Source: Mobula hypostoma (Eukaryota). From it: a stretch of 64,000 nucleotides of DNA. Below are positions 1-42,411 of the stretch, in pieces. A program made the translations under genes and the position numbers. Under the pieces are notes generated by a model. That model had not been told where the DNA came from and did no database searches. It saw only the letters and a program-made list of their open reading frames with translations. The first letter of the stretch is position 1. Each line of letters begins with the position of its first letter. Location: contig NC_086124.1 in NCBI RefSeq assembly GCF_963921235.1, positions 16,368,001 to 16,432,000 on the forward strand. Reading direction: 5' to 3'.

Positions 1-1890
1 CCTGTCTGCGGACCGGGAAGCTTGCCACCAGTGACAGTTCTACGTGGCGCTTATTACGACAGCAGGGATAGGAGGGTAGAGAGAAAAGTTGTGGCTGACA
101 TTAAACATAGGAAAACGTAAAATGGAATTGCAGGAGAAATAAACTCACATTCGGATAAAAAGTTCAGTTAATTTATTATCAATATAAATATATGTCACCA
201 TCAAGAAGCACAATTCATTTTCTGGCGGGCAAAATAACCATTCCTGTCTTGATCACTGACTGAGAAGACAGCATGTCCTCCTGGGTAGTGTTATACTAAT
301 AAAAAATTAGTTTGGCCGTCTCTGGAGTGGAGTCTAGACCTCTTCTGGAGTCGTATAAAACTCTAGTTGGGCCTCCTCTGGCGTGCTGTTCAAAAATCTA
401 GTTCAGCCTTTTCAAAGCTTAAAGTTCGAAGCACATTTTACTATCAAGGTATGCATAAATTATTCAATCTTGGGGTTTGTCTGCTTACAGGCAACCACAG
501 TATCCAATATTAAAAAAGATCAACACCCAATCTACAGAGAGATAAACAAAACAAATCAATTTGTGAAAACAATAAAGCAAATATCACCATTCAGAATGAA
601 ATTGAGTCCATAAACCTTGAAGCCAAAGAGGATTAGAGTATAAAAGTCCAGTTCAGCCTCCTCTGGAAAACTACATCTAGTCTGGTTGTTGCATTATAGG
701 AAATAATTGAAGACTTTGGAGAGGATTCAGAATAGATTTAGACAATAAGAACAGAAATAGGTCATTCGGTCCATCGATTTTGCTCTGTCATTCCATCATA
801 TCGGAGTTAATATCCCTGTCAATCACGTTTTTCAGCATTCTCTCTGTGACCTTTTGTCTCCCTGACTAATCAAAAACCTATATCGCAAAGCCGGAAAAAC
901 AAGCTTTTCCCTCAGTGTTTACTCTTCCCTGTCTGGCCTGCTGAGTTCCTCCAGCATTTTGTGTGTGTTGCAAGCATGTGAAGAAGATTGGTTGATAGGC
1001 AATGAGCAGAGTAGGAATAAAGGAGGCCTTTTATGGTTGCCCGATCCTCTTAATAGCTGCTAGGAAAATTATTAACACTTTCCTTAAACAGGAATTTTTC
1101 CAGGTGTCTTCAAATCTGTGGCTGTAAAACCCCTACTTACTAACTACAGGCATAGATCAAAACTTCCCTTCCTGGGCAAGTTTCTTGAGAAAGACATATT
1201 TAAACAGCACAACTTTTTGAATGAGCCCATTACATCAATACCAATCAGTTGGAATACATCCATATTTATCCCTTCTACCAGCACTTGTCCTGTAACCTGG
1301 GTAATTGAAGTGATTGACAAGACATTTCTAAAATACCATTAGGCACTCTGCTTTCACCACTTTCTCTGGTAGAGTGTTCCAGTTACTCACCCTCAATTTA
1401 CACCCCCCCCCCACCATGTCCTGCAGGTCTATCTACTTCTGATATGGGGGAAAGTTCTCTGCAACCTACCCGATCTCAACCCCTGATTATTTACTACACC
1501 TAAATTATCTCCCCTCTTCAGCATGGATCATGGCTGGGTCAGTGAATGTTTGCCATCTACATCAAATATTGTCTGGATGATAATATTTTAACACCGAACA
1601 ACAAATTTGCTGATAGCAGCAAGATTGGGGATGTAGTGGACAATGAGGAAGCTATTGAAGCTTGCAGTGTGATTTGGGAATTATTGCGTGAATGTGGAGT
1701 CGCAGGTAGCGAGCCCACAGAGAGAGTTCTAAGCACATTGGCCTTCATAAATAAAAACATTGGGTACAGAAGTTGGGATGGGGTAATGAAAGGAGATTAT
1801 GAGAGTAAATACATTTTTGCCAGGAAAATATACAATTAATCATGCTCTCCAAATGCTCACAGACGGCAAAATATTGCAGACACTGTGAGT

Positions 1891-1906
1891 GGCTCTAAAA
1901 AGAGCC
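1891..1906 (-). terminator. Retained histone stem-loop of H2A pseudogene 1
   Basis: GGCTCT-TTTT-AGAGCC with a fully paired stem; no recognisable HDE. Confidence 0.85.
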
Positions 1907-1937
1907 TTTGGGTAGCTGGGTTTCATATTCTGCCTCT

Positions 1938-2195
1938 TCACTTACTGGCTCCGCCGTTTTTCTTGGTGCGGCCTCGTTACCGGGTGATCGTCACCTCTCC
2001 ATATGATGAGGGCCTTCTTGTTGTCCCTAGCCGCGTTGCCAGCCAGTTCAAGAATTTCAGCCGTCAGATACTGGAACACAGAGCCCAGAAAGACCGAGGC
2101 TCCGTCACCCACTCACTCAGCATAGTTGCCCTTTCTCAAGAGGAAATGGGCCGGGGACGAGCTTTCCTGCTGGTTTTACTCTGTCCACTCTTTTG
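1938..2195 (-). pseudogene. H2A pseudogene, unit 1
   Basis: Aligns to the intact H2A ([18 protein letters not shown]; ends KKNGGASK-stop) but has lost the ATG and carries several internal deletions, including [18 protein letters not shown]. Confidence 0.95.
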
Positions 2196-2758
2196 AACAA
2201 GCTCAGCAATACTCAGAGAATGAGAAAATTCTTCCGGCCCTCGGCTTCTTTGTATACCCTGTGGGGATGCAATCAGACAATCAGGATTGGTGCGGAAACG
2301 CTTAAGCTGAATGGAGAACAAATAAACCAGCGAGAAAGCCGATTTATTCACTCATCAAAATCAAAAGCGCAGAAGTAACTTCTTACCCGCCGAAAATAAA
2401 CTGAAACATGAAAACAGCCCGCCAAAAATCCTTTCTTCAAACCGAATCTAAAATAATCATTACTGATCTGCTTGTGGAATAATTCCCCGCATTAACCCAT
2501 TAATAAAGTCCGCCACATCTAATGTTTGCGTAGCTAATATTGCATAAGTGTTTGGGTATTTCATTTAACGATATGTCCACTCTGAGAGAACAAAATCGTT
2601 TTTCAGTTGCTGTTCCCGGTCATTGAGTAAACTGCATGATGTTACGAGTTGCTCTTCGCAAACTACGGCTGGAGTTTAGCCTGCAATTTTGAAAAATATA
2701 TTGGTGAAAATACCGCCTGGCATTGAAATTGAATTAAAAGAATATGACGAAAAAATTG

Positions 2759-2799
2759 CAGCTCTGTTAACGAAATAGTGAGTGGCTCTTAAAAGAGCC
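2759..2799 (-). terminator. Histone 3' stem-loop (2784-2799) and U7 histone downstream element, H2B unit 1
   Basis: Minus strand reads cccaaa GGCTCTTTTAAGAGCC actca ... AACAGAGCTG. Confidence 0.95.
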
Positions 2800-2831
2800 T
2801 TTGGGTTTTCGGTTTGTTTTGGCAGCACTCT

Positions 2832-3203
2832 TCACTTGGAGCTGGTGTACTTGGTCACCGCCTTTGTCCCCTCCGACACGGCGTGCTTGGCCAGCTCCCC
2901 GGGCAGCAGCAGGCGCACTGCGGTCTGGATCTCCCGAGAGCTGATGGTGGATCGCTTGTTGTAATGGGCTAAGCGGGAAGCCTCGCCAGCGATGCGCTCG
3001 AAAATATCATTCACGAACGAGTTCATGATGCTCATGGCCTTGGAGGAGATGCCGGTATCGGGGTGAACCTGCTTCATCACTTTGTAGATATAGATGGAGT
3101 AACTCTCCTTCCTCAGCCTCCTGCGCTTCTTGCCAGTCTTGCCTGATGGTTTCGGCAGCGCTTTCTTAGCGCCCTTCTTGGGAGCAGGCTTCTGATCGGG
3201 CAT
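2832..3203 (-). CDS. H2B: Replication-dependent histone H2B, unit 1 (123 aa, intronless)
   Basis: [17 protein letters not shown]...[26 protein letters not shown]...AVTKYTSSK. The ATG is at 3203 (the ORF track begins at an upstream non-ATG codon). A stem-loop and HDE lie downstream; TATA, octamer and CCAAT motifs lie upstream. Confidence 0.98.
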
Positions 3204-3255
3204 TTCTTCCGTCGATTTCAGACTCAAATAAACAGGATTTCCGTCGGAGCACGTC

Positions 3256-3415
3256 TTAAATAGGAAAGGCTGACGTCAGTATGCTAATCAAGGAATGGAG
3301 CACTTGAGAATGTTCATTGGCTACCTTGAGAGACGAATCATCATCAAATTATTACGAGAAATACTCTATTTGGATATCAGAGGCTACAAATACAGTCACT
3401 CGCTCCTCTAATTGG
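3256..3415 (-). promoter_or_regulatory. H2B promoter, unit 1: TATA, CRE, octamer variant, CCAAT boxes
   Basis: TATTTAA at 3256-3262, TGACGTCA at 3271-3278, ATTAGCAT (plus strand ATGCTAAT) at 3281-3288, CCAAT at 3316-3320. Confidence 0.85.
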
Positions 3416-3490
3416 AAGCCCCTCCCAGTCTGCGGACTAGGAAATTTGCAGGCCCGTGATGTTCTCCGTGCCGTTCATTGCGACATGGGT

Positions 3491-6400
3491 TAGAAACATA
3501 GAAAGCCTGCAGCACAATATACGCCCTTCGGCTCACAAAGCTGTGCCGAACATGTACTTACCTTATAACTACGTAGGCTTACCCATAGCCCTCTATTTTT
3601 CTGAGCTTCATGCATCCACCCAGGAGTCTCTTAAGAGACCCTATCGTTTCCGCCTCCACCACCGCCGCCGGCAGCCCATTCCACGCACTCACCACTCTCT
3701 GCGTTAAAAAAAAACTTACCACTGACATCTCCTCTGTATCTACTTCCAAACACCTTAAAAATATGTCTGCCATTTCAGCACTGGGAAAAAGCCTCTGACT
3801 ATCCACACGGCAATGCCTCTTATTATCTTGTACACCTCTATGAGGTCAGCTTTCATCCTCCGTCGCTCCAAGGAGAAAAGACCGAGTTCACTCAACCTAT
3901 TCTCATAAGGCATGCTCCCCAATACAGGCAAGACCTTGTAAATCTCCACTGCACTCTTTCTATGGTTTCCACGTCCTTCCTGTAGTGAGACGACCAGAAT
4001 TGAGCTCAGTACTTCAAGTGGGAGCTGACCAAGGTCCTATATAGCTGCAACATTACCACGCGGCGCTCTTAAACTGAATCCCACGATTGATGAAGGCCAA
4101 TGCACCGTATTGTGTCCGACGGACTAGGACCCCAAGATCTCTCTGATCGTCCACACTGCAAGAGTCTTGCCATTCTGCCATCATATTTGACCTACCAAAA
4201 TGAACCACCTCACATTTTTCTGGGTTAAACTCCATCTGCCTCTTCCCAGTCCAGTTTCGCTTCCTATCAATGTCCCATTGTAACCTCTGCCAGCCCTACA
4301 CACTATCCACAACACCCCAAACCTTTGTGTCATCAACAAATTTACTAACCCATCCCCTCACCCCGCACTTCCTCATACAGGTCATTTATAAAAATCATGA
4401 AGGGTAGGGGTCCCAGAACAAATCCGTGAGGCCCACCACTTGTCACCGGCCTCCATGCAGAATATGACCCATCTACAACCACTCTTTTCCTTCTGTGGGC
4501 AAGCCAGTTCTGGACCCACAAAGCAATGTCCCCTTGGATCCCATGCCTCCTTACTTTCTCAATAAGCCTTGCATGGGGCACCTTATCAAGTGCCTCGGTG
4601 AAATCCATATACACTACATCTACGGCTCTACCTTCATCAATGTGTTTAGTCGTATCCTCAAAAAGTTCAATCAGGTTAGTAAGGCATGACCTGCATTTGA
4701 CAAAGCCATGCTGACTATTTCTAATTATCTTATGCCGCTCCAAGTGTTCATAAATCCTGCCTCTCAGGATCTTCTGCATCAATGTACCAACCACTGAAGT
4801 AAGACTGTCTGGTCATTAATTTCCTGGGCTATCTCTACTCCCTTTTTTAAATAAGGGAAGAACATCCACAACTGTCCAATCCTCCGGAACCTCTCTCGTC
4901 CTCATTGATGAATCAAAGATCATCGCCAAAGGCTCAGAAATCTCCTCCCTTGCTTCCCACAATAGTCTAGGGTACAACCCGTCCGGTCCTGGTGACTTAT
5001 CCAACTTGATGCTTTCCAAAAGATCCAGCACATCCTCTTCCTTAATATCTACATGCTCAAGCTTTACAGTCCACTGCCAGTCATCCCTACAATCGCCAAG
5101 ATCGTTTTCCATATTGAATACTGAAACAAAGCATTCATTAAATATCTCTACCATCTCCTCCGGTTCCATACACACTTTTCTACTGTCACACTTGATTGGT
5201 CCTATTCTCTCACATCTTATCTTCTTGCTCTTCACATACTTGTAGAATGCCTTGGAGTTTTCCTTAATCCTGTCCACCAAAGCCTTCTCATGGCCCTTTC
5301 TGGCTATCCTAATTTCATTCTTAAATTCCTTCCTGCAGGCCTTATAATCTTCTAGATCTCTATCATTACCTAGTTTTTTGAACCTTTCATAAGCTCCTCT
5401 TTTCTTCTTGACTAGATTTACAATAGCCTTTTTTACACTACAGTTCCTGTACGCTACCATCCTTTCCATGTCTCATTGGAACGTATTTACACAGAACCCC
5501 ATGCAAATATGGCCTGAACATTTGCCACAATTCTTCCGTACATTTCCCTGAAAACATCTGTTTCCAATTTATCCCTCTAAGTTCCTGCCTGATAGCCTCA
5601 TATTTCCCCTTATTCCAATTAAACGTTTCCCTAACTTGTCTGTTCCCATCCCTCTCCAATGCTATGGTAAAGGAGATAGAATTGCGATCACCATCTCCAA
5701 AATGGTCTCCCACTGAGAGACCTGACACCTGACCAGGTACATTTCCCAATATCTGATCAAGTATAGCCTCTCCTCTTGATAGATTATCTACATATTGTGT
5801 CAAGAAACCTTCCTGAACACACCTAACAAACTCCACCCCATCTAAACCCCTCACCCTTCCTATTCCTAACTTCCACCCACAGAGACACCATAGACAACCC
5901 CTCCATGACTTCCTCCTTTTCTGCAGCTGTGACACTATCTGTGATCAACAGTGCCACACCCACATCTCTTTTGCCTCCCTCCTTGTCCTTTCTGAAACAT
6001 CTAAAGCCTGGCGATAGAAGTAGCCATTCCTGTCCGTGCACCATCCAAGTCTCTTTAATGGCCACAACATCATAGCTCCAAATGCTGATCCACGGTCTAA
6101 GCTCATCCACTTTATTCATAATACTCTTTGCATTAAAATAGACACATCCGAAACCATCGGTCTGAGTGTGTCCCTTTACTATCACCTGCCTATCCTCCCT
6201 TTTGCACTGTCTCCAAGCTTTCTCAGTTTGTGAGCCAACCTCACTTTCCTCCATCACTTCCGTTCAGTTCACACTCCCCAGCAATTCAAGTTTAAACTCT
6301 CTCCAATAGTCTTTGCAAACCTCCCTGCCAGGATATTGGCCCCCCCAGACTCAAGTGCAACCCGTCCTTTTTGTACAAGTCACACCTGCCCCAGATGAGG

Positions 6401-9443: not shown

Positions 9444-10450
9444 TGATATTGATCAGCTCAGCATAGGTGCGCAAAGCTATTGGGCAGAAGAAACTGCAGT
9501 TTGATGGACAGGGGAAGCAGACGATCCAGTTGTCTTTATTTCACCCTTTTTGTGGACTCTAAACTAATTCTTGCGGTTGGATAATCTAATCAGAAGAACT
9601 GAATGTGGACACAGAAAGCTTCAAGGAACGATTTGCTGAACCTGAGACCATTCTCTGACAAGTAGTCACTTGTTATGTAAAGAGCGTGGACTCTAATCTG
9701 ATTCTTGACTCTGGGACAATCTAATCAGAGCAACAAACCTGAGACCATTCGCAAAGGAGTAGCTACTTGTCATGTAAAATGGCAGACCAATCTGTAATCT
9801 CATTAGACTCTGTCTGCGTTGCCTCATTTAACTGGTTTGGACCAGTCAGAGTGTAAAGGCATAAATACAAAAGGCTGGGGTGGGCAGAGCCATGAAACAA
9901 TATTGGTTGTAGCCCTGTACAGTGACCAGTAAGCAGGTGACCCAGGTACATCACGTGACCTGAGCCAATAGGATGGAGATGCAATGGTTCAATTGATGAG
10001 GAACAGTATAAGACTCAGGAGCTCTAAGTAAGCAGGGGCGTATTTAGAACCCTCTCCAACAGCCATACACCAACCATTGTGGATAAGGAGGACCCCACAG
10101 ACACGTGGAGATTGGAACCATGAGGAATCCCTGTCCAGTGTAGACTCATTTCCCGGGTAATACCTTTTCTCTTCATTGACGGTTCACGGATTGTCAGGGG
10201 TTCTAGTAGAGAGCACAAAGGTAGATAGGAGTGTGAACCCACATGCTTTTTAGTTGAAATAATAAAAGTTACTTGTTGACACATACAGATTTTCTGTGCC
10301 TCACTGATCATTATTAAAAGGGGTGATTCTTGTAACAGAATTGGTGTCCCTGGCTGGGCTCGATGATAAATCTCTTTGTTCAGCAGGAGACTTGAGTCGG
10401 ACCATGTGAGTGAGGTGCAGAGATTTGGGGCTGGGTAGTTATCGGTTACT
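9444..10450 (+). mobile_element. 5' LTR (9444-10337), tRNA-Asn PBS (10342-10363) and leader of an LTR retroelement; internal region deleted
   Basis: TG...TGTAACA ends, duplicated U3 block, CCAAT at ~9965, TATAA at ~10007, AATAAA at 10261, then TGGTGTCCCTGGCTGGGCTCGA. Confidence 0.85.
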
Positions 10451-10540
10451 GGCTGTTATCAGGGTGAACCTGCTTCATCACCTTGTACACGTAGATGGAG
10501 TAAAAGCTTCAGGCTTTTCTTAAATGAGTTTCAGACACAG
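10450..10540 (-). pseudogene. H2B remnant ([15 protein letters not shown]), paralogous to 26043-26411
   Basis: agggtgaacctgcttcatcaccttgtacacgtagatggagtaa, followed by the same upstream sequence (tcagacacagaatgaaa) as at 26425. Confidence 0.9.
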
Positions 10541-10739
10541 AATGAAATGGAACTGGTTGCATCGCCAATTTAATTGGCAATGTGGTCCCCACCTGTAGTA
10601 ATGAGGAATCAGCAAAATAAGGTTCTTATCAGTAGATTTGGACAAATGAAAGCTAACGTTTCAATCCAACCCTTTTATTGGACAATAGACCAATCACAGC
10701 CTAGGCTGTCCACAGTCAACAGGGGTTAGCAATGGGTCA

Positions 10740-12090: not shown

Positions 12091-13866
12091 GTCGGGCTTT
12101 TTTTCCTTAAGATACTCTTGACTCAATTTGATTGGAATGTTTTTAAGAGGTGACAAATATAGAGGGTAGTTTGTGAGTTTGACTCTACAATTTGAGGGGG
12201 AGAAATTCAAGATATATCTATCCATATTACAGTGGAGTAAATGAAATTACAGAGGCATGAGAGAGGAGCTGATCAACATCAAATGAAAGGTGGCACAAGC
12301 AGAGATGACAGCATTGCAGCAATGGCTGGAGTTTATAGGAGCAATCTGGAAGGCACAAAACAGTTGTATCACAAAATTGTAAAAACAAGCTTTTCCTTCA
12401 GTGTTTACTCTTCTGCATAGATGCTTTCTGGCCTGCTGACTTCCTCCAGCATTTTGTGTGTGTTGCAAGCATGTAAAGAAGATTGGTTGATTGGCAATGA
12501 GCAGAGTAGGAATAAAGGAGGCTTTTATGATTGTCAGATCCTCTGAATAGCTGCTAGGAAAATTATTAACACATCCCATTAACAGGAATTTTTTCAGGTG
12601 CCTTCAAGTCTGTGGCTGTAAAACCCCTACTTACTAGCTACAGGAATAGATGAAAACTTCCCTTCCTGGGAAAGGTTTCTGAGAAAGACATAATCAAACG
12701 ACACAACTTTCTGAATGAGCCCATTACACTGATACCAATCAGTTGGAATCCATCCATATTCATCCCAACTGCCAGCACTTGTCCTGTAACCTGGGTAATT
12801 CAAGTGATTGCAAGACATTTCTAAAGTACTAAAGGAACTCTGCTTTCACTACTCCCTCGGGTAGAGTGTTCCAGTTACTCACCCTCAACTTACCTCCCAT
12901 GTCCTGCAGGTCTATCTACTCCCGACATGGAGGAAAGCTCTTTGCAACCTATCCGATCTCAACCCCTGATAATTTCATACAACTAAATAATTTCCCCTCT
13001 TAAGCAGGGATTGTGCTGGGTCAGTGCATGTTTGCCATTTACAGCAACTATATGGATGATAATACTGTAATACCGATCAACAAATTTGCGGATGGCACCA
13101 AAATTGAGGGTGTAGGGGACAACGAGGAAGGCTGTTGAAGCTTGCAGTGTAACTTGGGAATTATTGCGTGAATGTGGAGTCACAGGTAGCGAGCACACAG
13201 AGAGCTCTTGGCACATTGACCTTCATAAATGAGTACATAAGTTAGGATGATATGATGAAATTGCAAGAGGCCTAATTCAGAGTAGGGTGTGCAGTTCTAG
13301 TCACCTACCGACAGTTTAACATCTGTCCCAGAAAAGATTTGAAGGTCTAAGAGAGGCGGGAATGTAAGTAGTGAAAATGGGGTAATGAAGGGTGATTATG
13401 GGAATAAATACATTTATGCAAGTTAAATATGCAATTAAGCATGTTCAAAAACAACAAAACATTATCTGATGAAGGGCTGAAGAGTTTTTATATCAGTTAT
13501 TCAGGACTTTCGGTAGTAATGTTACAGACTAACCTTCAATATTGAAGCGGAGTGAAAATAAAACTGACCCCAACCATCTCTCCGGGGAGCATACACACAC
13601 ACACACACAGCAGAAAACTTCAGCTCCGGAAACGATTTAGAAAACCAGCTCGGCACATCCCAACTCGCCTTTTTTTTAAAAGCAAAAAAAAAAATACCTG
13701 TAGAATATACATTAGTATGATTTTCGTATTTCTGTAAAAAGTACTTCCTCATTCTCTTTTGCTGTGACCAAACAGCATTCTCTTTCTTAAGAACTTTCGC
13801 AGCGAGAGCGAAACCCGAATCCTTTCCTGCGCACTTATGGAATGCCCCTTCACAGACACTGTGAGT

Positions 13867-13882
13867 GGCTCTGAAAAGAGCC
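13867..13882 (-). terminator. Retained histone stem-loop of H2A pseudogene 2
   Basis: GGCTCTTTTCAGAGCC, identical to the intact H2A stem-loop; HDE degenerate (GAAGGGGCA). Confidence 0.85.
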
Positions 13883-13913
13883 TTTGGGTAGCCGGGTTTC
13901 ATATTCTCTGTCT

Positions 13914-14212
13914 TCCCTTACTGGATCCTCCGTTTCTTTTGGGTAACAACACGGCCTGGATATTGAGTAACACAACGTCCTGGGCGATCGTCACCCCTCC
14001 TGATGACGCGGTCCTTCTTGTTGTCCCTGGCCGCGTTGCCAGCCAGTTCAAGAATTTAGGCCGTCAGATACTCGAGCACAGAACCCAGAGAGACCGAAGC
14101 TCCGGCACCCACTTGCTCAGCATAGTTGCCCTTTCTCAAGAGCTTATTAACACGGCCCAATAGGAACTGGGCCGGGGACAAGTTCTTCTGCTGGTTTTAC
14201 TTCCTCCATATC
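13914..14212 (-). pseudogene. H2A pseudogene, unit 2
   Basis: H2A homology with the same N-terminal and alpha3/alphaC deletions; start and stop codons are mutated. Confidence 0.95.
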
Positions 14213-14757: not shown

Positions 14758-14798
14758 CAGCTCTGTTAACGATATAGTGAGTGGCTCTTAAAAGAGCC
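14758..14798 (-). terminator. Histone stem-loop and HDE, H2B unit 2
   Basis: GGCTCTTTTAAGAGCC at 14783-14798 followed by AACAGAGCTG. Confidence 0.95.
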
Positions 14799-14830
14799 TT
14801 TGGGCTTTCGGTTTGTTTTGGCAACACTCT

Positions 14831-15202
14831 TCACTTGGAGCTGGTGTACTTGGTCACTGCCTTTGTCCCCTCCGACACGGCGTGCTTGGCCAGCTCCCCG
14901 GGCAGCAGTAGGCGCACTGCGGTCTGGATCTCCCGAGAGCTGATGGTCGATCGCTTGTTGTAATGGGCTAGGCGGGAAGCCTCGCCAGCGATGCGCTCGA
15001 AAATGTCATTCACGAACGAGTTCATGATGCTCATGGCTTTGGAGGAGATGCCGGTGTCAGGGTGAACCTGCTTCATCACTTTGTAGATATAGATGGAGTA
15101 ACTCTCCTTCCTCAGCCTCCTGCGCTTCTTACCAGACTTGCCTGATGGCTTCGGCAGCGCTTTCTTGGCGCCCTTCTTGGGAGCAGGTTTCTGATCGGGC
15201 AT
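14831..15202 (-). CDS. H2B: Replication-dependent histone H2B, unit 2
   Basis: Intact 123-aa H2B ORF with stem-loop at 14783-14798 and a conserved promoter. Confidence 0.98.
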
Positions 15203-15254
15203 TTTTTCACTCGAGTTCAGACTTGGACAAGCGGTAGTGCCATCGGAGCGCGTA

Positions 15255-26042: not shown

Positions 26043-26411
26043 TCACTTTGAACTGGTGTACTTGGTCACTGCTTTTGTCCCTTCCGACATGGTGTACTTG
26101 ACCACCTCCCCGGGTAGCAGCAGGCATACCGCAGTCTGGACCTCCCAGGAGCTGATGGTCAATTGCTTGTCGTAGCAGGTTAGATGGGAAGCCTCACCCA
26201 CGATGAACTCGAAAATTTCATTCATCGTTGAGCTCTTGATGCTCATGGCATTGGAGGAGATGCTGGTATCAGAGTGAACCTGCTTCATCACCTTGTACAC
26301 GTAGATGAAGTAAGTCTCCTTCCTCATCCTTTTGCACTTGTACCTCTTGCTTTGAGCTTTGGACACTGTTTTCTTGGCATGCTTCTTAGCAGCTTTGGAT
26401 AGTTCAGGCAT
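26043..26411 (-). pseudogene. Divergent H2B-like gene with an open 122-aa frame, probably a pseudogene
   Basis: Full H2B-length ORF with many substitutions at invariant residues (R>H, R>Q, R>W, R>C, A>V, A>T). The stem-loop is broken (AGCACTTTTAAGAGCC, 25996-26011) and the TATA region is deleted relative to the paralogue at ~10540-10600. Confidence 0.8.
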
Positions 26412-27251
26412 TTCTTAAATCTGTTTCAGACACAGAATGAAAGTCCCTTCCCTGTAGTAATGAGGATTCGGCAGAAATAAGGTTCTCATTAGTAGATTTG
26501 GACAAATGAAAGCTAACATTTCAATCTAACCCTTCGATTGGGCAATGTGAACAGATCAACCACAGCCCAGGCTGACCAAAGTCAAAAAGGTTTACCAATG
26601 GTTATTTGGTTAATACAAGGAGACTTAAATTTGGGTATCCAATATTGGTAACATTACTGGAGTATTGTGAGCACTTCATTCACAAGGTCTTCAGTTCTGG
26701 GTGGATGGGAAATAAATAGGTACAAAATACTAGCTTGTTTCATGTGAAATATGATCCCAGTGCACCCCTTTCTGTCACTCCATGGTTTGCCTGTGGATGA
26801 TTTTAGCCCTTCAAGAAAATGTCATGACGAAGAATGATTGTATGTCAGTAGCACAGGTATTTCAGTGATATACACAAAGCAGACATAATAGTTTCTTACA
26901 CTCTACAAGGATGGTTCATAAGATCCAGTGACGGGTCGTTCAGGTGTTTCAGTTTTGTTCCAAAGTTTCAGGTTTCTATGAAGCAAAAAATATCAGATAA
27001 AGTATCAGAATTCACAGCAAAGATATTTGCTATCATTTCAGCCTTGGAATGGGTTGAAGAAGTATGCCCCGATTCTGGACAACTGTGCTTTGATTCATTT
27101 TCGGTTTTGTTTATTATGTGAAGTGTTGTATGACATAGGTGATCATAGTCTTTCCATGCTCAGGACTGCTCTTAGCAAATTTTTCTACAGAAGTAGCTTG
27201 CCGTTGCCATCTTCTGGTCAATGTCTTTACAAGTTTCAGGCTTACCAGCTA

Positions 27252-28859
27252 CAAACCCCATTTCCAGAAAAGTTGGGATATTTTCCAAAGTGCAATAAAA
27301 ACAAAAATCTGTGATACGTTAATTCACGTGAACCTTTATTTAACTGATAAAAGTACAAAGAAAAGATTTTCAATAGTTTTACTGACCAACTTAATTGTAT
27401 TTTGTAAATATACACAAATTATGAATTTGATGGCTGCAACACAGTCAACAAAAGTTGGGACAGAATTAAAATAAGATTGAAAAGTGCACAGAATATTCAA
27501 GTAACACCGGTTTGGAAGACTCCACATTAAGCTGGCTAATTGGTAGCAGGTGAGGTAGCATGACTGGGTATAAAAGTAGCGTCCATCAAAGGCTCAGTCT
27601 TTGAAAGCAAGGATGGGTCATGGCTCACCCCTTTGTGCCAAAATTCGTGAGAGAATTGTTAGTCAGTTCAAAAGGAACATTTCTCAACGCAAGATTGCAG
27701 AGAATTTAGGTCTTTCAACATCTACAGTACATAATATTGTGAAAAGATTCAGAGAATTCAGAGACATCTCAGTGCGTAAAGGGCAAGGTCAAAAACCACT
27801 GTTGAATGTGCGTGATCTTCGAGTCCTCAGGCAGCACTGTCTAAGAAACCGTCATGCTACTGTGACAATTACAGCCACCTGGGCTCAGGAGTACTTTGGA
27901 AAACCATTGTCACTCAACACAGTCCGTCGCTGTATCCAGAAATGCAACTTGAAACTGTATTACGCAAGGAGGAAGCCATACATCAACTCTATGCAGAAAT
28001 GCCGGCGAGTTCTCCGGGCCCGAGCTCATCTCAGATGGACCGAAAAACTGTGGAACCGTGTGCTGTGGTCAGATGAGTCCACATTTCAGCTAGTTTTCGG
28101 AAAACAAAAAACAGGCGTCGAGTTCTCCGTGCCAAAGATGAAAACGACCATCCAGATTGTTATCAGCAAAAGGTGCATAAGCCAGCATCTGTGATGGTAT
28201 GGGGGTGCATCAGTGCTCACGGCATGGGTGAGTTGCATGTATGTGAAGGTACTATTGACTCTGAGGCGTATATTAGGATTTTAGAGAGACATATGTTGCC
28301 ATCAAGGCGACGTCTCTTCCCGGGACGTCCATGCTTATTTCAGCAGGACAATGCCAGACCACATTCTGCACAGGCTACAACAGCGTGGCTTTGTAGTCAT
28401 AGAGTGTGTGTGCTTGACTGGTCTGCTGCCATCCAGATCTATCTCCTATTGAAAATGTATGGCGCATCATGAAGAGGAGAATCAGACAACGGAGACCACG
28501 GATTGTTGAGCAGCTGAAGTCTTATATCAAGCAAGAATGGACAAAATTTCCAATTGCAAAACTACTACAATTAGTATCCTCAGTTCCAAAACGATTAAAA
28601 AGTGTTAGTAAAAGGAAAGGTGATGTAACACAATGGTAAACTTGCCTCTGTCCCAACTTTTGTTGAGTGTGTTGCAGCCATCAAATTCTAAAATTGTGTA
28701 TGTTTACAAAATACAATTAAGTTGGTCAGTAAAACTATTGAAAATCTTTTCTTTGTACTTTTGTCAGTTAAATAAAGGTTCACGTGAATTAACATATCAC
28801 AGATTTTTGTTTTTATTGCATTTTGGAAAATATCCCAACTTTTCTGGAAATCAGGTTTG
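27252..28859 (+). mobile_element. Full-length Tc1 DD34E transposon with ~210-bp IR/DR-type TIRs and TA target duplication; transposase frameshifted
   Basis: TA|caaaccccatttccagaaaagttggga ... tcccaacttttctggaaatcaggtttg|TA. ORFs 27601-28194 (HTH, WSDES) and 28173-28472 (QQDNARPH). There are 34 codons from D to the E of PIE after restoring a 1-nt deletion. The empty site is visible at ~34528. Confidence 0.96.
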
Positions 28860-29497
28860 TATTAAAACAGGTATATTGAACTATATTTTCCTTGGCATTG
28901 GACAAGTCATTGAGGTTACATCTAGGCTTCTGTATAAAATAAAGTGGCAGTTATTCCAGCCAATCAATCATTTAAACTTAAGGACATCAAAGTAGTGTTG
29001 CCTTTGGAAATATGAGCGATGAAAGCTATAATTAAAATTTAAATTTCATCATTGTGGCAACGAAGATTGGATAAGGAAAGTATGGCATTCATATCAAAAT
29101 TATGTCGAGTTCCTCCACCATTTTTCCAGAATATCTTTTGATTAATTTTCGGAGAAATGAGCACAAATCTGAAGAGATTTTCTATCAGTTATTCAGGACG
29201 TTCGGCAGTAATGTTACAGACTAACCTTCAATATGGAACCGGAGTGAAAATAAAATTGATCCCAACCATCCCTTCGGGGAACATACACACGCAGCAGAAA
29301 ACTTCATAAAACCACCTCGGCACATCCCAGCTCGCTTTTTAAAAGAAAAACAATAACTTGTAGAAGATAAATTAGTATGATTTTCGTGTTTCTTTAAAAA
29401 GAACTTCCTCAGAAATCTTTCACAGTCACAGCAAAACCCGAGTCCTTTCCTCCGCACTCATGGTATCCCAGGGGAACCCCTCTACGTACCTGTGAAT

Positions 29498-29513: not shown

Positions 29514-29544
29514 TTTGGGTAGCTGGGTTTCATATTCGGACTCC

Positions 29545-29821
29545 TCAGTTACTGCCTCCGCCGTTTTTCTCGGTGCGGCCTGGTTATTGGGTAACACTCT
29601 ACCCCTACATATGACGCGGGCCTTCTTGTTGTCCCTGGCCGCGTTGCCAGCCAGTTCAAGAATTTCAGCCGTCAGATCCTCGAGCACAGAAGCCAGAAAG
29701 TCCAAGACTTCGGCACCCAGTCGCTCTGCATAGTAGCCCTTTCTCAAGAACCTATCAACACGGCCCAATGGAAACTGGGCCGGAGGCGAGCTTTCCTGCC
29801 TGTTTTACTTCATCGACTCAT
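29545..29821 (-). pseudogene. H2A pseudogene, unit 3
   Basis: The ATG at 29821 is out of frame with the histone-fold segment (ORF 29409-29768, [15 protein letters not shown]...[18 protein letters not shown]), and the alpha3 region is deleted. Confidence 0.95.
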
Positions 29822-30377: not shown

Positions 30378-30418
30378 CAGCTCTGTTCACGAAAGATTGA
30401 GTGGCTCTTAAAAGAGCC
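30378..30418 (-). terminator. Histone stem-loop and HDE, H2B unit 3
   Basis: GGCTCTTTTAAGAGCC at 30403-30418 followed by AACAGAGCTG. Confidence 0.95.
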
Positions 30419-30450
30419 TTTGGGTTTTCGGTTTGTTTTGGCAACACTCT

Positions 30451-30822
30451 TCATTTGGAGCTGGTGTACTTGGTCACCGCTTTTGTCCCTTCTGACACGG
30501 CGTGCTTGGCCAGCTCCCCGGGCAGCAGTAGGCGCACTGCGGTCTGGATCTCCCGGGAGCTGATGGTGGATCGCTTGTTGTAATGGGCTAGACGGGAAGC
30601 CTCGCCAGCGATGCGCTCGAAAATATCATTCACGAACGAATTCATGATGCTCATGGCCTTGGATGAGATGCCGGTGTCGGGGTGAACCTGCTTCATCACT
30701 TTGTAGATATAAATGGAGTAACTCTCCTTCCTCAGCCTCCGACGCTTCTTGCCAGACTTGCCTGATGGTTTCGGCAGCGTTTTCTTAGCGCCCTTCTTGG
30801 GAGCAGGCTTCTGATCGGGCAT
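30451..30822 (-). CDS. H2B: Replication-dependent histone H2B, unit 3
   Basis: Intact 123-aa H2B ORF with one tail change (KKTL versus KKAL) and stem-loop at 30403-30418. Confidence 0.98.
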
Positions 30823-30871
30823 TTCTTCAGTCGAGTTCAGACTAAAATAAGTAGAGTAAGCAGAGCGCTGA

Positions 30872-31030
30872 TTAAATAGGAAACGCTGACGGCGGTATGC
30901 TAATCAAGGAATGGAGTATGCGAGAATGTTCATTGGCTACACTGTGAGACGAATCACCATCGAAATAACAACGTCAAATTCTATATTTGGATATCAGAAG
31001 TTACAAATACAGTGGCTCGGTCCACCAATC
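30872..31030 (-). promoter_or_regulatory. H2B promoter, unit 3
   Basis: TATTTAA, half-CRE TGACG, ATGCTAAT at 30897-30904, CCAAT boxes. Confidence 0.85.
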
Positions 31031-31794
31031 AGAAGCCTCTCCCAGCCTATTGACCCGGAACCTTGCCGGGAAGTGACCGTTCTTCGCGCTAGCAGGGTAA
31101 GAGGGTAAAGGGAAAGTTGTGGCTGACATTAAACAAAGGAAAACGTAAAATACAAATGCAGATGAAAGGTTCAAACTAAATTTATTATCTAAGTACATAT
31201 ATTTCACCATCAAGAAGCATGATTCATTTTCTTGTGGGCATAAACAGACTGAGAAGAGAGTATGTCCTGGGCGGTGTTAAACTAATAATATTAGTTAGGC
31301 CGTCTCTGGAGCGGAGGCTAGTCCTCTTCTGGACTCGTATAAAATTCTAGTTAGGCCTCCTCGGATAAGAGACTAAAGTCTAGTTAGGACTCCTGGGGAT
31401 TTGAGCTAAAAGTCTAGTTAAGCCTTCTCTGGAGTGCTGTTCAAAAATCTAGGTCAGCCTTCTCAAAGTTGAAAGCTCAAAGTACATTTTATTATCAAAA
31501 TATGTATAAATTATACAATCTTTGGATTTGTCTGCTTACAGGCAGCCACAATACCCAATTAAAAAAAAATCAACACCCAATCTACAGAGAGAGAAAAACA
31601 TAAATCAATTCATGCAAACAATAGAGCAAGCATCAGATTTCAGAATGAAATGCGTTCATAAACCTGAAGCTGGAGAGGATTAGGGTATAAAAGTCCATTT
31701 CAGCCTCCACCGGAATACTACATTCAAGTCTGGTTGGGGCATTAGAGGAAAGAACTGAAGACTTTGGAGAGGATTCGGAATAGATTTAGGCTAT

Positions 31795-39593: not shown

Positions 39594-39952
39594 TCACTTA
39601 TTAGTTCCGCCGGTTTTCTTGGGCAACAACACGGCCTGGATCTAGGTTAACACTCCACCCTGGGCAATTGGCATTCCATCCAGCAGCTTGTTTAGCTTCT
39701 CGTCTTTGCGGTCTGCCAGCTGCAGATGCCTGGGGATGCTGCGGGTCTTTTTGTCGTCCCGGGCCACGTTGCCGGCCAGCTCAAGGATTTCAGTCGTCAG
39801 ATACTCGAGCACAGCGGCCAGAAGAACCAAGGCTCCGACACCCACCCGCTCAGCATAGTTGCCCTTTCTCAAGAGCCTATGAACACCACCCAATGTGAAC
39901 TGCAGTCCGGCCCGGAACGAGCTTTCCTACCGGTTTTTCTTTATCCATTCAT
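39594..39952 (-). pseudogene. H2A pseudogene, unit 4 (least deleted)
   Basis: ATG AAT GGA TAA gives a stop at codon 4. It also has a ~22-nt frameshifting N-terminal deletion, a premature TAG at 39642-39644 and a broken stem-loop at 39546-39561, but it retains PRHLQL...KLL. Confidence 0.95.
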
Positions 39953-40421
39953 TTCAACGAGATCAGCACACAGAGAATAAGGAAATGTTTCCGGCCGTCG
40001 GCCTTCTTGTATTTCCTGCGGGGATGCCAGGAAACATTTAGGATTGGTGCAACAACGCCTAATCTCATTGGAGAGAGCTAATAAACCAATAAGAGAGCCG
40101 ACTTATTTACCAATCAAAATCAAAAGCGCGGAATTAACTGCTTACCCGCCGAAAATTAACTGAAACTTGAGAACAGCCCGCCAAAAACCTTCGTTGAAAA
40201 TTAGTCAAACCATTGCAGATATTTGTCGATTAATTCTCTGCATTATTCCATTACTGAAGTTCGCCACATCTAATGTTTGAGAGTAGCTAATATTACAGAA
40301 GTGTCTGGAGATTTCATTGCTCTTCTCAAATTATGGTTGGAATTTTGCGTAGTTTTAACAAATTATAGGTGAAAGAACCATTTGGCATTGAAATCGGATT
40401 CACAGAACATGGCCAGATATG

Positions 40422-40462
40422 CAGCTCTGTTAACGATATAGTGAGTGGCTCTTAAAAGAGCC
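40422..40462 (-). terminator. Histone stem-loop and HDE, H2B unit 4
   Basis: GGCTCTTTTAAGAGCC at 40447-40462 followed by AACAGAGCTG. Confidence 0.95.
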
Positions 40463-40494
40463 TTTGGGTTTTCGGTTTGTTTTGGCAGCACTCT

Positions 40495-40866
40495 TCACTT
40501 GGAGCTGGTGTACTTGGTCACTGCTTTTGTCCCTTCCGACACGGCGTGCTTGGCCAGCTCCCCGGGCAGCAGCAGGCGCACGGCGGTCTGGATCTCCCGG
40601 GAGCTGATGGTCGACCGCTTGTTGTAATGGGCTAGACGGGAAGCCTCGCCAGCGATGCGCTCGAAAATATCGTTCACGAACGAGTTCATGATGCTCATAG
40701 CCTTGGATGAGATGCCGGTGTCGGGATGAACCTGCTTCATCACTTTGTAGATGTAGATGGAGTAACTCTCCTTCCTCAGCCTCCTACGCTTCTTGCCAGA
40801 CTTGCCGGATGGTTTCGGCAGCGCTTTCTTAGCGCCCTTCTTGGGAGCGGGCTTCTGATCGGGCAT
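40495..40866 (-). CDS. H2B: Replication-dependent histone H2B, unit 4
   Basis: Intact 123-aa H2B ORF from the ATG at 40866, with stem-loop at 40447-40462. Confidence 0.98.
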
Positions 40867-40917
40867 TTCTTCCGTGGAGTTCAGATTCAATTAAAAGAAG
40901 AACCTGCGGAGTGGCAC

Positions 40918-41075
40918 TTAAATAGGAAACGCTGACGGTGGTATGCTAATACAGGAATGGGGTTTCCGAGCATATTCATTGGATACTTGGAGAAACGAAT
41001 CAACCATCGAATTTATTTCCACAAATCATTTCATTGGATATCAAAGATTAAAAATATAGTCGCTCGCACCACCAA
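40918..41075 (-). promoter_or_regulatory. H2B promoter, unit 4
   Basis: TATTTAA, half-CRE TGACG, ATGCTAAT at 40943-40950, CCAAT boxes. Confidence 0.85.
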
Positions 41076-42411
41076 TCAGAAGCTTCGCCCAGACTGCGGA
41101 CCTGGACCCATGCCAACCCGTGGCGTTTCTCTGTGCCGTTTACTGCGGCATGAGGGATAAGAGGGTAAAGCGAGAGTTGTGGCTGACATTAAACAAAGGA
41201 AAATGTTAAATACAAATGGACTTCAAATAAACTCACATTCAGATGAAAAGTTCAAAATAAATTTATTATCGAAGTGCATATATGTTACCATCAACAAGCA
41301 TGGTTCATTTTCTTGCGGGCAGACTCCATACATTGATAACAGAATACTAGGTTTCATAGAATAAATGGGAGATTGCATCAATCTGGGCATTTAACCAGTG
41401 TGCAAAAGAAACAAATAAAAAAGAAAGATAATATTAATAAATAATAAGCAATATACATTGAGAATATGAGTTGAAGGGTCGCTGAAAGTGAGATCAAGTT
41501 GAGTTAACGTTTCAATGATGAAGTGAATTTATCCCCTTTGGTTCAAGAGTCTGATGTTTGAGGAATAATAACCATTCCTGAAACCAATGGTGTGAGTCCT
41601 GAGGCTTTTAACTTTGTCCTGATAGCAGAGTGAGAAAAGAGCATGTCCTGGGTGGTGGGGGTCCCTGCGATGGAGTCCCTGCGATGGAGTCACTTTTAAG
41701 GAGCTATGATCTTGGATCCCAAGATTTCCATGCTAAGCAACAATGTTGAGGACCTGTACTGTAAGTTGCTTATTTCATGGTCAAGGGCTGCAAGAGACCG
41801 ACTGAGAAAATTCAGTTATCAGAAGGGCAAAGGGACTTGTACAAGTTTCCAAAAGGCTAACTTGCAAATTCTGTCAAAGGTAAGGAAGTGAAATGAAAAG
41901 TTTCTATTCATTTCAAGATGCTTAAAATATAAATGCAAGGAAATAATATTGAGGCATAATAAAGCATTTGTCATTCCGCTTGAGTACCATAAGCAGTTTT
42001 GAACCCTTCATCTAAGAAAGGATGGGCTGGCATTGGACAGTGTCTAGAGGAGCTTCGCGAAATTTATCATGGGAATGAAAATGTTAATGTTTGAGGAGAG
42101 TTTATTGGCTCTGGCCCAGTACTGGAGCACTTACCAATATCTTTAACTTCTCACTTTGGCAGTCTGAGTTATCCATCTGCTTCAAGCAGGCTTCAATCAT
42201 ACCGATGCCTCAGAAGAACGTGGTAATATGCCTTATTGTTTACCATCCAGTAGCACTTACATCCACTGTGGTGAAGTGCTTTGAGAGGTTGATAATGAAG
42301 CACACCAACTCTGGCCTGATAAGTGACTTGGATTTGTTCCATTTTGCCTGTAGCACAATAGATCCACACTAATGGTATTGCATTGGCTCATCACTTTACC
42401 CTGGAACCTCA

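What the first reader, a model, noticed from the sequence alone, without database searches (positions are those of the whole stretch)
1885..41160. H2B-only amplification: four conserved H2B genes, each carrying an H2A that was already dead
Seen: four tandem psiH2A-H2B cassettes. The H2B proteins differ by at most 2 residues and keep the full promoter, stem-loop and HDE, while the spacers are visibly diverged and full of indels. All four psiH2A copies share a ~22-nt frameshifting deletion of the SKAKSRS region, so H2A was inactivated before the unit was amplified. Established: H2A and H2B form a 1:1 dimer and are usually duplicated together. Inference: this array supplies extra dosage of one H2B subtype without its own H2A (4 intact H2B against 1 intact H2A in the window, and no H1, H3 or H4). 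It could serve H2A variants or H2A genes elsewhere, or a specific developmental stage.
Basis: partly seen in the sequence, partly recalled or inferred. Interest (0 to 1): 0.72.

Follow-up and report, generated by a model that had tools for sequence, protein, structure and literature searches.

The report
Ancient H2B-only histone array in stingrays
A devil-ray chromosome carries a long tandem array in which each repeat holds a well-preserved histone H2B gene next to the wreck of its H2A partner; this layout is shared with other stingrays, so it is an old, selected but fairly ordinary variation on how vertebrate histone clusters evolve.

Summary
The window is Mobula hypostoma OY992621.1:16,368,001-16,432,000. 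It holds four head-to-tail H2B -> psiH2A cassettes on the minus strand, one intact H2A, and no H1, H3 or H4. The array continues left of the window, giving at least 8 intact H2B genes over about 90 kb. Every array psiH2A shares the same 22-nt SKAKSRS frameshift deletion. This is true in M. hypostoma, M. birostris, Hypanus sabinus and Hemitrygon akajei. H2B->H2A cassettes outside the array lack it, so H2A died before the amplification. At least three units predate the Myliobatidae/Dasyatidae split. The H2B genes are under strong purifying selection (dN/dS about 0.03, no indels or stops in 16 copies). Their promoter blocks, stem-loop and HDE are conserved, whereas psiH2A drifts at the spacer rate. 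There is also some gene conversion limited to the coding sequence, but it cannot explain the pattern alone. The H2B protein is not a special subtype, because identical protein is encoded elsewhere on the chromosome. Related rays carry H2A/H4 tandem repeats, so H2A:H2B balance is probably set across the whole cluster. Expression and a genome-wide census remain untested. This is a new variant of a known kind, of moderate interest.

The parts
2832..3203 (-). H2B_1 coding sequence (123 aa, S23T). Promoter blocks lie about 3204-3435 and the stem-loop at 2759-2804.
   Evidence: ORF, tblastn 99% identity; Rfam RF00032, 37.7 bits; promoter and HDE alignment
1938..2192 (-). psiH2A_1. ATG changed to AAG; deletions of 28 (22+6), 21, 53, 17 and 7 nt. 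The relic stem-loop at 1867-1911 still scores.
   Evidence: alignment to intact H2A; 39.4 bits
14831..15202 (-). H2B_2 coding sequence (123 aa). Promoter about 15203-15435, stem-loop at 14758-14803.
   Evidence: The orthologue in M. birostris is L008:10001-10372.
13914..14209 (-). psiH2A_2. 4-nt deletion through the ATG, plus 28-nt and 53-nt deletions. Relic stem-loop at 13842-13887.
   Evidence: The same lesions are present in M. birostris L008.
30451..30822 (-). H2B_3 coding sequence (123 aa, A15T). Promoter about 30823-31055, stem-loop at 30378-30423.
29545..29821 (-). psiH2A_3. Stop at codon 4; deletions of 28, 53, 16 and 7 nt. The stem-loop has decayed (GGCTCTTCTCAGAGCC, below the Rfam threshold).
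40495..40866 (-). H2B_4 coding sequence (123 aa). Promoter about 40867-41100, stem-loop at 40422-40467.
39594..39952 (-). psiH2A_4, the least decayed copy. It has only the 22-nt deletion plus a stop at codon 4, and a decayed stem-loop. Its orthologue is Hemitrygon L018a.
26046..26411 (-). Old psiH2B from a different H2B lineage. Its 122-codon frame is still open by chance. It belongs to the ancestral repeat unit.
   Evidence: No Rfam stem-loop. The M. birostris orthologue is frameshifted and the paralogues carry stops.
10455..10556 (-). Fragment of the same psiH2B element in the neighbouring unit.
   Evidence: The orthologous fragment is at M. birostris L008:14748-14849.
56617..56994 (-). Intact H2A (126 aa) upstream of the array on the same strand. 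Stem-loop at 56543-56588. It sits in the same relative position as the H2A of an H3-H2A-H4 group beside the array in Hemitrygon (L015/L018); in Hypanus the matching group (L012) lies about 50 kb from the one sampled cassette (L017).
6..231 (-). Sequence homologous to the far-upstream flank of cassette 4 (41094-41321). It implies a further cassette just left of the window.
   Evidence: 77.7% over 229 nt. More cassettes were confirmed further left in L009, L003 and L010.

Best explanation
The region is the right-hand part of an old tandem array of segmental repeats. The units are 10-15 kb here, inflated by transposons. The array lies on a Mobula hypostoma chromosome that also carries other histone loci 0.4-0.8 Mb away.

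**Origin.** The ancestral unit was a head-to-tail H2B -> H2A cassette, and an older dead H2B also lay in the repeat unit. A 22-nt frameshift deletion killed the H2A. The unit was then amplified by unequal crossing-over. At least three units already existed in the common ancestor of Myliobatidae and Dasyatidae.

**Evolution since then.**
- Each H2B has been kept as a working replication-dependent gene by purifying selection. This covers the promoter with CCAAT, an octamer-like ATTAGCAT and TATA, an intronless 123-codon ORF, the stem-loop and the HDE.
- Occasional short gene conversion limited to the coding sequence is layered on top of that selection.
- The H2A relics drift neutrally.

**Function.** The inferred function is bulk S-phase H2B supply. 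The matching H2A would come from H2A-rich repeats (H2A/H4 units) and pairs elsewhere in the histone region. Balance would therefore be set cluster-wide and not within a unit.

**Shown versus inferred.**
- Shown: the anatomy, the shared deletion, orthology across species, the selective constraint, and neutral decay of psiH2A.
- Inferred: expression, the dosage role, and where the partner H2A comes from in M. hypostoma itself.
For: **Location and extent.**
- The window maps to OY992621.1 with an offset of 16,368,000.
- Eight intact H2B genes lie between 16,318,996 and 16,408,866.

**Shared deletion.** The 22-nt deletion is in all array psiH2A copies of four species. It is absent from non-array cassettes L006, L014, L016, L004 and L005.

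**Age of the units.** The noncoding tree gives orthologue groups that span families:
- (Mh_w4, Ha_L018a), support 99/99.
- (Ha_L018b, (Mh_w2, Mb_L008)), support 98/97.
- (Hs_L017, (Mb_L007a, Mh_L003a)), support 100/99.

**Neutral rate.** The M. hypostoma and M. birostris arrays are collinear with p = 0.028-0.030 over 10-18 kb. The 755-nt aligned segment that holds psiH2A_2 differs by 0.029; the psiH2A_2 region itself gives K = 0.041.

**Constraint on H2B.**
- Within M. hypostoma, dS averages 0.186 and dN 0.005, giving omega 0.027.
- Against dasyatid copies, dS is 0.305 and dN 0.024.
- The coding sequence has 0 gap events, against 18-36 per kb in the flanks.
- The motif set and its spacing are kept in 16 copies: CCAAT at -114 to -117 and TATTTAA ending at -49 to -52 from the ATG. 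The 3' UTR, stem-loop and HDE are almost invariant.
- Rfam stem-loops are found for all four H2B genes. Pfam confirms histone folds.

**H2A supply elsewhere.** H2A/H4 repeats occur in Hypanus L014 and Hemitrygon L016.
Against: - There are no expression data, so none of the copies is shown to be transcribed.
- Synonymous divergence between M. hypostoma and M. birostris orthologues is four times the flank rate (40 differences observed, 10.2 expected). All sampled M. birostris copies share V30, and three of the four share A36. The coding sequences therefore do exchange sequence, and part of their similarity is not independent evidence of selection on each copy.
- Within-species dS (mean 0.19) is lower than the spacer K (0.2-0.4).
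- A genome-wide H2A and H2B census was not possible. In the two other M. hypostoma loci sampled (L004, L005), intact H2B genes again outnumber intact H2A genes.
Confidence: 0.75

Rival explanations
1. Gene conversion alone. Under this view the array H2B copies are not individually useful. They look intact because conversion from functional donors keeps overwriting them.
For: - Orthologue synonymous divergence is in excess, with 33 of 51 differing sites toggling between states that are present in paralogues.
- M. birostris array copies carry a species-specific T81/G88/G106 haplotype.
- The coding-sequence tree groups copies by family (support 83/80). AU tests disfavour the orthologue clades, with p = 0.035, 0.117 and 0.063.
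Against: - dS among paralogues is 0.10-0.31, so the copies are not homogenised.
- The PHI test finds no tract structure (p about 0.5).
- Flanks follow strict orthology with no sign of conversion, yet the promoter motifs and spacing, the stem-loop and the HDE survive across K of 0.17-0.3.
- Conversion does not rescue the adjacent psiH2A.
- None of the 16 copies has a disabling lesion.
Confidence: 0.1
2. Specialised array. Under this view the array supplies H2B for a particular stage or partner (oocyte or cleavage stage, germline, or H2A variants) and not for general S-phase dosage.
For: - The array is physically separate from the mixed histone loci.
- It has been maintained for a long time.
- Array promoters carry a TGACGTCA/CGTCAGC element where non-array copies have CTGTGAGC or GTGTCA.
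Against: - The protein is identical to that of non-array copies.
- The overall promoter architecture and the 3' end are the same.
- The stem-loop and HDE argue for ordinary replication-dependent processing.
- No tissue data are available.
Confidence: 0.12
3. Assembly or annotation artefact. Under this view the repeats are collapsed or expanded haplotypes or a mis-assembly, and not real paralogues.
For: Histone arrays are often mis-assembled (general knowledge; also stated in PMC13525598).
Against: - Units differ by 15-25% and carry unit-specific transposon insertions.
- The array is collinear, unit for unit, in an independently assembled second species at about 3% divergence.
- Its units have orthologues in two further genera.
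- There are no N runs in the window or in the loci.
Confidence: 0.02

Closest known systems
In-situ H2A pseudogenes beside live H2B genes in the mammalian replication-dependent histone clusters (HIST1; e.g. H2AC2P, H2AC10P)
   Same: One member of an H2A/H2B pair decays in place while the neighbouring gene stays functional. PMC9526256 describes pseudogenisation in situ as a feature of these clusters, and PMC13525598 cites the HIST1 H2A pseudogenes.
   Different: In mammals these are scattered single events in divergent (head-to-head) pairs. Here one half-dead head-to-tail cassette was itself amplified into an array of at least 8 units and kept across families of rays.
Birth-and-death evolution of histone multigene families under strong purifying selection (Piontkivska, Rooney, Nei and colleagues, as reviewed in PMC13525598)
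   Same: dS far exceeds dN. Paralogues are older than the species and have orthologues across species. Pseudogenes lie within the cluster.
   Different: A layer of concerted evolution limited to the coding sequence is superimposed. The locus therefore shows both modes at once, as the review proposes for some genomes.
Tandem histone quintet or quartet arrays (Drosophila, sea urchin early genes)
   Same: Tandem repetition of a histone-bearing unit by unequal crossing-over. Copy number changes between species; one 8.1-kb unit is present in M. hypostoma and absent in M. birostris.
   Different: Those units carry all core histones, are nearly identical, and evolve in concert. These units carry one live gene type, are 15-25% diverged, differ in length, and are full of transposons.
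Solitary or 'orphon' histone genes and single-type histone arrays (recalled from the literature; not checked here)
   Same: Histone genes of one type are maintained away from their usual partners.
   Different: Here the fossil partner is still present in every unit, which records how the single-type array arose.

Membership tests
Replication-dependent (canonical) histone H2B gene | Histone-fold protein of H2B type with an intronless ORF of about 123-126 aa | tested here: met
   Pfam PF00125, 82 bits. Four uninterrupted 123-codon ORFs. The cluster members are named histone H2B in ray RefSeq records.
Replication-dependent (canonical) histone H2B gene | 3' stem-loop in place of a poly(A) signal | tested here: met
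   Rfam RF00032 scores 36.9-37.7 bits against a gathering score of 34, 27 nt after each stop codon (stem itself about 32 nt after).
Replication-dependent (canonical) histone H2B gene | Histone downstream element (U7 snRNA binding site) just 3' of the stem-loop | tested here: inconclusive
   A purine-rich block TTAACAGAGCTG lies 10-12 nt after the stem-loop and is conserved in 16 copies of four species. Pairing to the ray U7 snRNA was not tested.
Replication-dependent (canonical) histone H2B gene | H2B-type promoter with CCAAT, the octamer ATTTGCAT and TATA | tested here: inconclusive
   CCAAT and TATTTAA are present with fixed spacing. The octamer position reads ATTAGCAT, one mismatch from the consensus, in nearly all copies. 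Oct-1 binding was not tested.
Replication-dependent (canonical) histone H2B gene | S-phase-coupled expression | not testable with these tools
   No RNA data were available.
Unprocessed (duplicated) pseudogene: psiH2A | Disabling lesions in a copy that keeps the parent's flanking and promoter homology | tested here: met
   A 22-nt frameshift plus further deletions, lost ATGs or early stops, and a mutated TATA. The upstream region and stem-loop remain alignable to the intact H2A.
Unprocessed (duplicated) pseudogene: psiH2A | Evolves at the neutral rate | tested here: met
   M. hypostoma versus M. birostris: the 755-nt segment holding psiH2A_2 differs by 0.029 and the psiH2A_2 region gives K = 0.041, against 0.0295 for 18 kb of surrounding sequence. 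Only this one orthologue pair was measured.
Concertedly evolving tandem histone repeat (Drosophila or sea-urchin type) | Units nearly identical within a species, with paralogues closer than orthologues | tested here: not met
   Spacers are 80-85% identical. Noncoding parts cluster by orthology across families. Only the H2B coding sequence shows a weak grouping by species or family.
Concertedly evolving tandem histone repeat (Drosophila or sea-urchin type) | Each unit carries the full set of core histone genes | tested here: not met
   No H3, H4 or H1 in the window. Each unit has one live H2B.
Birth-and-death multigene family under purifying selection | dS far above dN, paralogues with orthologues across species, and pseudogenes in the cluster | tested here: met
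   omega of 0.027-0.08. Orthologue clades across families. psiH2A and psiH2B in every unit.
Specialised H2B variant (for example germline H2B variants) | Protein distinct from the canonical H2B of the same genome; usually no stem-loop | tested here: not met
   Protein identical to the H2B encoded at 15.59 and 15.88 Mb. The stem-loop is present.

The most novel reading that the evidence does not exclude
Stingrays may have divided their H2A and H2B supply between separate, long-lived sub-arrays: H2B-psiH2A repeats, and H2A/H4 repeats. H2A:H2B stoichiometry would then be set in trans at the level of the whole histone locus and not by paired genes. In that case the H2B array would be a dosage module whose copy number is itself under selection.
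Probability: 0.3. Interest if true: 0.5.

Novelty: new variant of a known kind. Interest (0 to 1): 0.38.

Why it matters
Histone clusters are usually discussed either as balanced repeats or as jumbled clusters with occasional dead genes. Here one half-dead H2B/H2A pair became the repeat unit of a long array. The live half has been kept for the whole history of at least two stingray families. Each unit holds a selected gene next to a neutral relic of the same age. That makes the array a clean natural experiment for three purposes:
- Measuring selection against neutral decay.
- Separating birth-and-death evolution from gene conversion at a fine scale.
- Asking how cells balance H2A and H2B when gene numbers are uncoupled locally.

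It does not overturn any current view.

Tried and rejected
- **PHI recombination test** on the 12 Mobula coding sequences was not significant (p about 0.5). Conversion tracts could therefore not be demonstrated as tracts.
- **AU tests** of orthologue clades on the coding sequence were marginal (p = 0.035, 0.117, 0.063). They suggest concerted evolution but are not decisive.
- **Exact-protein look-up of the window's H2A** returned only Hypanus and Hemitrygon places. The M. hypostoma annotation holds merged or spliced H2A models, so H2A genes could not be counted that way.
- **Look-up of the L004 H2A variant** led to a second Hypanus chromosome with 124-aa H2B -> H2A pairs, not to the M. hypostoma H2A/H4 repeat.
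- **Look-up of the 124-aa H2B of Pristis and Narcine** gave solitary H2B genes with no H2A relic within 10 kb. The array's origin deeper than Myliobatiformes stays open.
- **Unsampled gap.** The 14 kb between L009 and the window (record 16,354,039-16,368,000) could not be fetched, because no protein in it is known.
- **Look-ups deliberately not made.** H3 and H4 proteins were not used as look-up queries. The same proteins occur in human, and that could have pulled human contigs.
- **Rejected ideas.**
  - A distinct H2B subtype: rejected because the protein is identical elsewhere on the chromosome.
  - Divergent pair organisation: rejected because both genes are on one strand.
  - The 26-kb H2B-like ORF as a fifth live gene: rejected because its orthologue is frameshifted and it has no stem-loop or promoter.
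- the large protein searches and structure prediction.

Full report
**Source and rules**

Exact-protein look-ups place the window at Mobula hypostoma GCA_963921235.1, record OY992621.1, positions 16,368,001-16,432,000, in the record's orientation. H2B_2 and H2B_4 of the window coincide with loci L002 and L001.
- All loci fetched come from elasmobranch assemblies: M. hypostoma, M. birostris, Hypanus sabinus, Hemitrygon akajei, Narcine bancroftii and Pristis pectinata.
- No fetched contig was taken for human. H3 and H4 proteins were deliberately not used as look-up queries, because identical proteins occur in human.
- Neither the window nor any locus contains N.
- The annotation holds spliced or merged gene models: a 148-aa H2A model, 260-aa double-H2A models and a 139-aa model spanning two H2B genes. 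These were not rebuilt, and that joined step was left out.

**1. The observation**

tblastn with the window's own intact H2A and H2B and the ORF list give the following, all on the minus strand.
- Four intact H2B genes at 2832-3203, 14831-15202, 30451-30822 and 40495-40866.
- An H2A relic about 0.6 kb downstream of each H2B.
- One intact H2A at 56617-56994.
- A diverged H2B-like open frame at 26046-26411.
- An H2B fragment at 10455-10556.

Both genes of a cassette are on the same strand, with H2B upstream. The unit is therefore head-to-tail and not the divergent pair usual in vertebrates (PMC13525598).

The H2B proteins differ only by S23T (copy 1) and A15T (copy 3).

Alignment of the relics with the intact H2A shows the claimed deletion. 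Copy 4 lacks exactly the 22 nt that encode S-K-A-K-S-R-S. Copies 1-3 lack the same 22 nt plus the adjacent 6 nt, and they share a second deletion of 53-54 nt. Each copy also has private lesions: a lost ATG, a stop at codon 4, or further deletions. All four have lost the TATA box.

Rfam finds the histone stem-loop above the gathering score after all four H2B genes, after the intact H2A, and after psiH2A_1 and psiH2A_2.

No H3 or H4 is found with ray H3 and H4 as queries, and there is no H1-like lysine-rich frame. Pfam confirms the histone folds.

**2. The array is larger and older than the window shows**

Self-comparison shows tandem segmental units of 10-15 kb. Their spacers are 80-85% identical and are interrupted by unit-specific transposons. 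Window positions 6-231 match the far-upstream flank of cassette 4, which implies another cassette just to the left.

Fetching neighbouring DNA confirmed intact H2B genes at record positions 16,318,996, 16,334,071, 16,343,671 and 16,350,398. Each has a psiH2A downstream.
- There are therefore at least eight intact H2B genes over about 90 kb.
- One 14-kb stretch remains unsampled.
- A broken H2B at the left end (16,314,898-16,315,124) may mark the boundary of the array.

M. birostris has a collinear array. It differs by 2.8-3.0% over 10-18 kb of aligned sequence and lacks one 8.1-kb unit. Hypanus sabinus (L017) and Hemitrygon akajei (L018) also have H2B -> psiH2A cassettes.

All 13 array relics examined, in all four species, share the 22-nt deletion. 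The two sub-classes, with and without the extra 6-nt and 54-nt deletions, both occur in Mobula and in Hemitrygon.

H2B -> H2A cassettes outside the array lack the deletion. Their H2A is intact in Hypanus L014 and Hemitrygon L016, nearly intact in M. birostris L006, and broken in other ways in M. hypostoma L004 and L005.

A maximum-likelihood tree of spacer plus relic gives starred orthologue groups that span families, and it places all non-array cassettes in one separate clade.
- (Mh_w4, Ha_L018a).
- (Ha_L018b, (Mh_w2, Mb_L008)).
- (Hs_L017, (Mb_L007a, Mh_L003a)).

Two conclusions follow. H2A was dead before the amplification. At least three units predate the split of Myliobatidae and Dasyatidae (taxonomy).

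**3. Selection on H2B**

| Comparison | dS | dN | omega |
|---|---|---|---|
| Four window copies, pairwise | 0.15-0.31 | 0-0.007 | - |
| Eight M. hypostoma copies, mean | 0.186 | 0.005 | 0.027 |
| M. hypostoma vs dasyatid array copies | 0.305 | 0.024 | 0.08 |

- Of 64 variable coding sites in the 15 Mobula copies (12 array, 3 non-array), 57 are synonymous. Five of the seven replacement sites lie in the N-terminal 36 residues.
- The coding sequence has no indel in any copy, while the flanks show 18-36 gap events per kb.
- Outside the coding sequence the flanks follow orthology, yet the promoter keeps its blocks: a distal ATTGG, ATATCCAAAT, GATTCGTC, CCAATGAA, ATTAGCATA, (TGA)CGTCA and TATTTAA. 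Spacing is constant to within about 3 nt in 16 copies from four species.
- The 75 nt from the stop codon through the stem-loop to the HDE are nearly invariant.
- The relics evolve at about the local neutral rate. Between the two Mobula species the 755-nt segment that holds psiH2A_2 differs by 0.029 against 0.0295 for the surrounding 18 kb, and the psiH2A_2 region itself gives K = 0.041. Only this one orthologue pair was measured.

Together these results mean the H2B genes are maintained as functional genes. Expression itself was not tested.

**4. Gene conversion is present but is not the explanation**

Several results point to some exchange within the coding sequence.
- Between the four M. hypostoma / M. 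birostris orthologue pairs, synonymous differences number 40 where the flank rate predicts 10.2 (Poisson P about 1e-12).
- 33 of the 51 differing sites toggle between states seen in other paralogues.
- All four sampled M. birostris array copies carry T81 and G88 (V30), and three carry G106 (A36). All M. hypostoma copies carry L30 and S36, even though the units are one-to-one orthologues.
- The coding-sequence tree groups copies by family (support 83/80). AU tests disfavour the orthologue clades that the flanks support, with p = 0.035, 0.117 and 0.063.

A PHI test shows no tract structure, so hypermutable sites cannot be fully excluded.

Conversion cannot account for four things: the large remaining dS, the conserved signals outside the coding sequence, the absence of any lesion, and the lack of rescue of the adjacent H2A. 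The locus therefore shows birth-and-death evolution under purifying selection with a thin layer of concerted evolution in the coding sequence. The recent review proposes exactly this mixture (PMC13525598).

**5.

'Amplified after H2A died' is supported, and so is 'kept by selection'.

'One H2B subtype' is not supported. The identical protein, the same promoter plan and the same 3' end occur at 15.59 and 15.88 Mb in M. hypostoma and at 15.46 Mb in M. birostris.

The local imbalance is likely offset elsewhere.
- Hypanus L014 and Hemitrygon L016 each carry three H2A/H4 repeat units plus an H2B -> H2A pair, giving four H2A to one H2B in 20 kb.
- M. hypostoma L004 shows an H2A/H4 unit and a merged two-H2A gene model running off the locus.

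I could not complete a census in M. hypostoma, however. In L004 and L005, intact H2B genes again outnumber intact H2A genes.

The intact H2A in the window lies upstream of the array on the same strand. It matches the position of the H2A of an H3-H2A-H4 group beside the array in Hemitrygon (L015/L018). In Hypanus a like group (L012) lies about 50 kb from the one sampled cassette (L017).

**6. The extra H2B-like frame**

The open frame at 26046-26411 is on record as a protein, but it is an old pseudogene of another H2B lineage that travels with the repeat unit.
- It lacks the promoter blocks and a scoring stem-loop.
- Its M. birostris orthologue carries a 14-nt insertion that shifts the frame.
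- Its paralogues lack the start codon and contain stops.
- A decayed copy sits in the Hemitrygon array.

**7. Comparison with what is known, and verdict**

[quoted passage not shown] H2A pseudogenes beside live H2B genes are known in mammalian HIST1 (PMC9526256; PMC13525598).

What is unusual here is threefold:
- A half-dead, head-to-tail cassette became the unit of a long array.
- The array persists across stingray families.
- H2A appears to be amplified separately, with H4.

The review's survey of more than 250 species does not mention cartilaginous fishes. I found no paper describing this array.

I rate it a new variant of a known kind. It is of moderate interest as a natural experiment, and it is not a surprise to the field.

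Noticed in passing
window 26046-26411 (-); also 10455-10556 (-): A 122-codon H2B-like open frame that is on record as a protein. It appears to be an old pseudogene. It has no scoring stem-loop or promoter, its M. birostris orthologue is frameshifted, and its paralogues carry stops. The short fragment is the same element in the neighbouring unit.
   Followed up: yes
window 27250-28861: A Tc1/mariner-like transposon with 215-bp terminal inverted repeats that are 95% identical. Its transposase frame (27601-28472) is broken. It is inserted in one repeat unit only.
   Followed up: partly
window 43874-44946 (-): A degenerate tandem repeat of 84-bp period that reads as C2H2 zinc fingers (for example [24 protein letters not shown]). 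It is broken by stops and lies between the array and the intact H2A.
   Followed up: partly
L007, L008, L011 (M. birostris) against the window and L003, L009, L010: All four sampled M. birostris array H2B genes carry V30, and three carry A36. All M. hypostoma copies carry L30 and S36, although the units are one-to-one orthologues by their flanks. This is a sign of concerted change limited to the coding sequence.
   Followed up: partly
L009:6441-14543 (M. hypostoma record about 16,339,500-16,347,600): An 8.1-kb unit with a live H2B (record 16,343,671) and a psiH2A has no counterpart in M. birostris L007. Because the unit is old (K about 0.2 to all others), M. birostris probably lost it.
   Followed up: partly
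L014:1387-11313 (Hypanus) and L016:4987-11299 (Hemitrygon): Three tandem H2A/H4 units of about 2.5-2.7 kb (the third set apart by a larger gap), followed by an intact H2B -> H2A pair. These stretches are H2A-rich and are the mirror image of the H2B array.
   Followed up: partly
L004:11140-11477 and L005:11164-11505, L005:19771-20148 (M. hypostoma, 15.59-15.88 Mb): A second, independent lineage of H2B -> psiH2A cassettes with other lesions and without the 22-nt deletion. There is also a separate H2A with an in-frame stop at codon 57.
   Followed up: partly
L006:11570-11950 (M. birostris, 15.46 Mb): The H2A of this otherwise intact cassette has a 1-nt deletion three codons before the stop, which changes and extends the C-terminus.
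   Followed up: no
window about 49473-56994 (-); L004:1-1548; L014:1387-4505; L018:5678-16427: Public gene models splice or merge neighbouring histone genes: a 148-aa H2A model, 260-aa double-H2A models and a 139-aa model spanning two H2B genes. These are likely annotation artefacts, and they hide single genes from exact-protein look-ups.
   Followed up: no
L021 (Narcine) and L022 (Pristis), 10001-10375: Solitary 124-aa H2B genes with no H2A or H2A relic within 10 kb on either side.
   Followed up: no
window 22448-23203 (+), 61679-62713 (-), 3490-5321: A retroelement gag-like zinc knuckle, a LINE reverse transcriptase and other retrotransposon debris. Together these make up most of the spacer and differ between units.
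   Followed up: no
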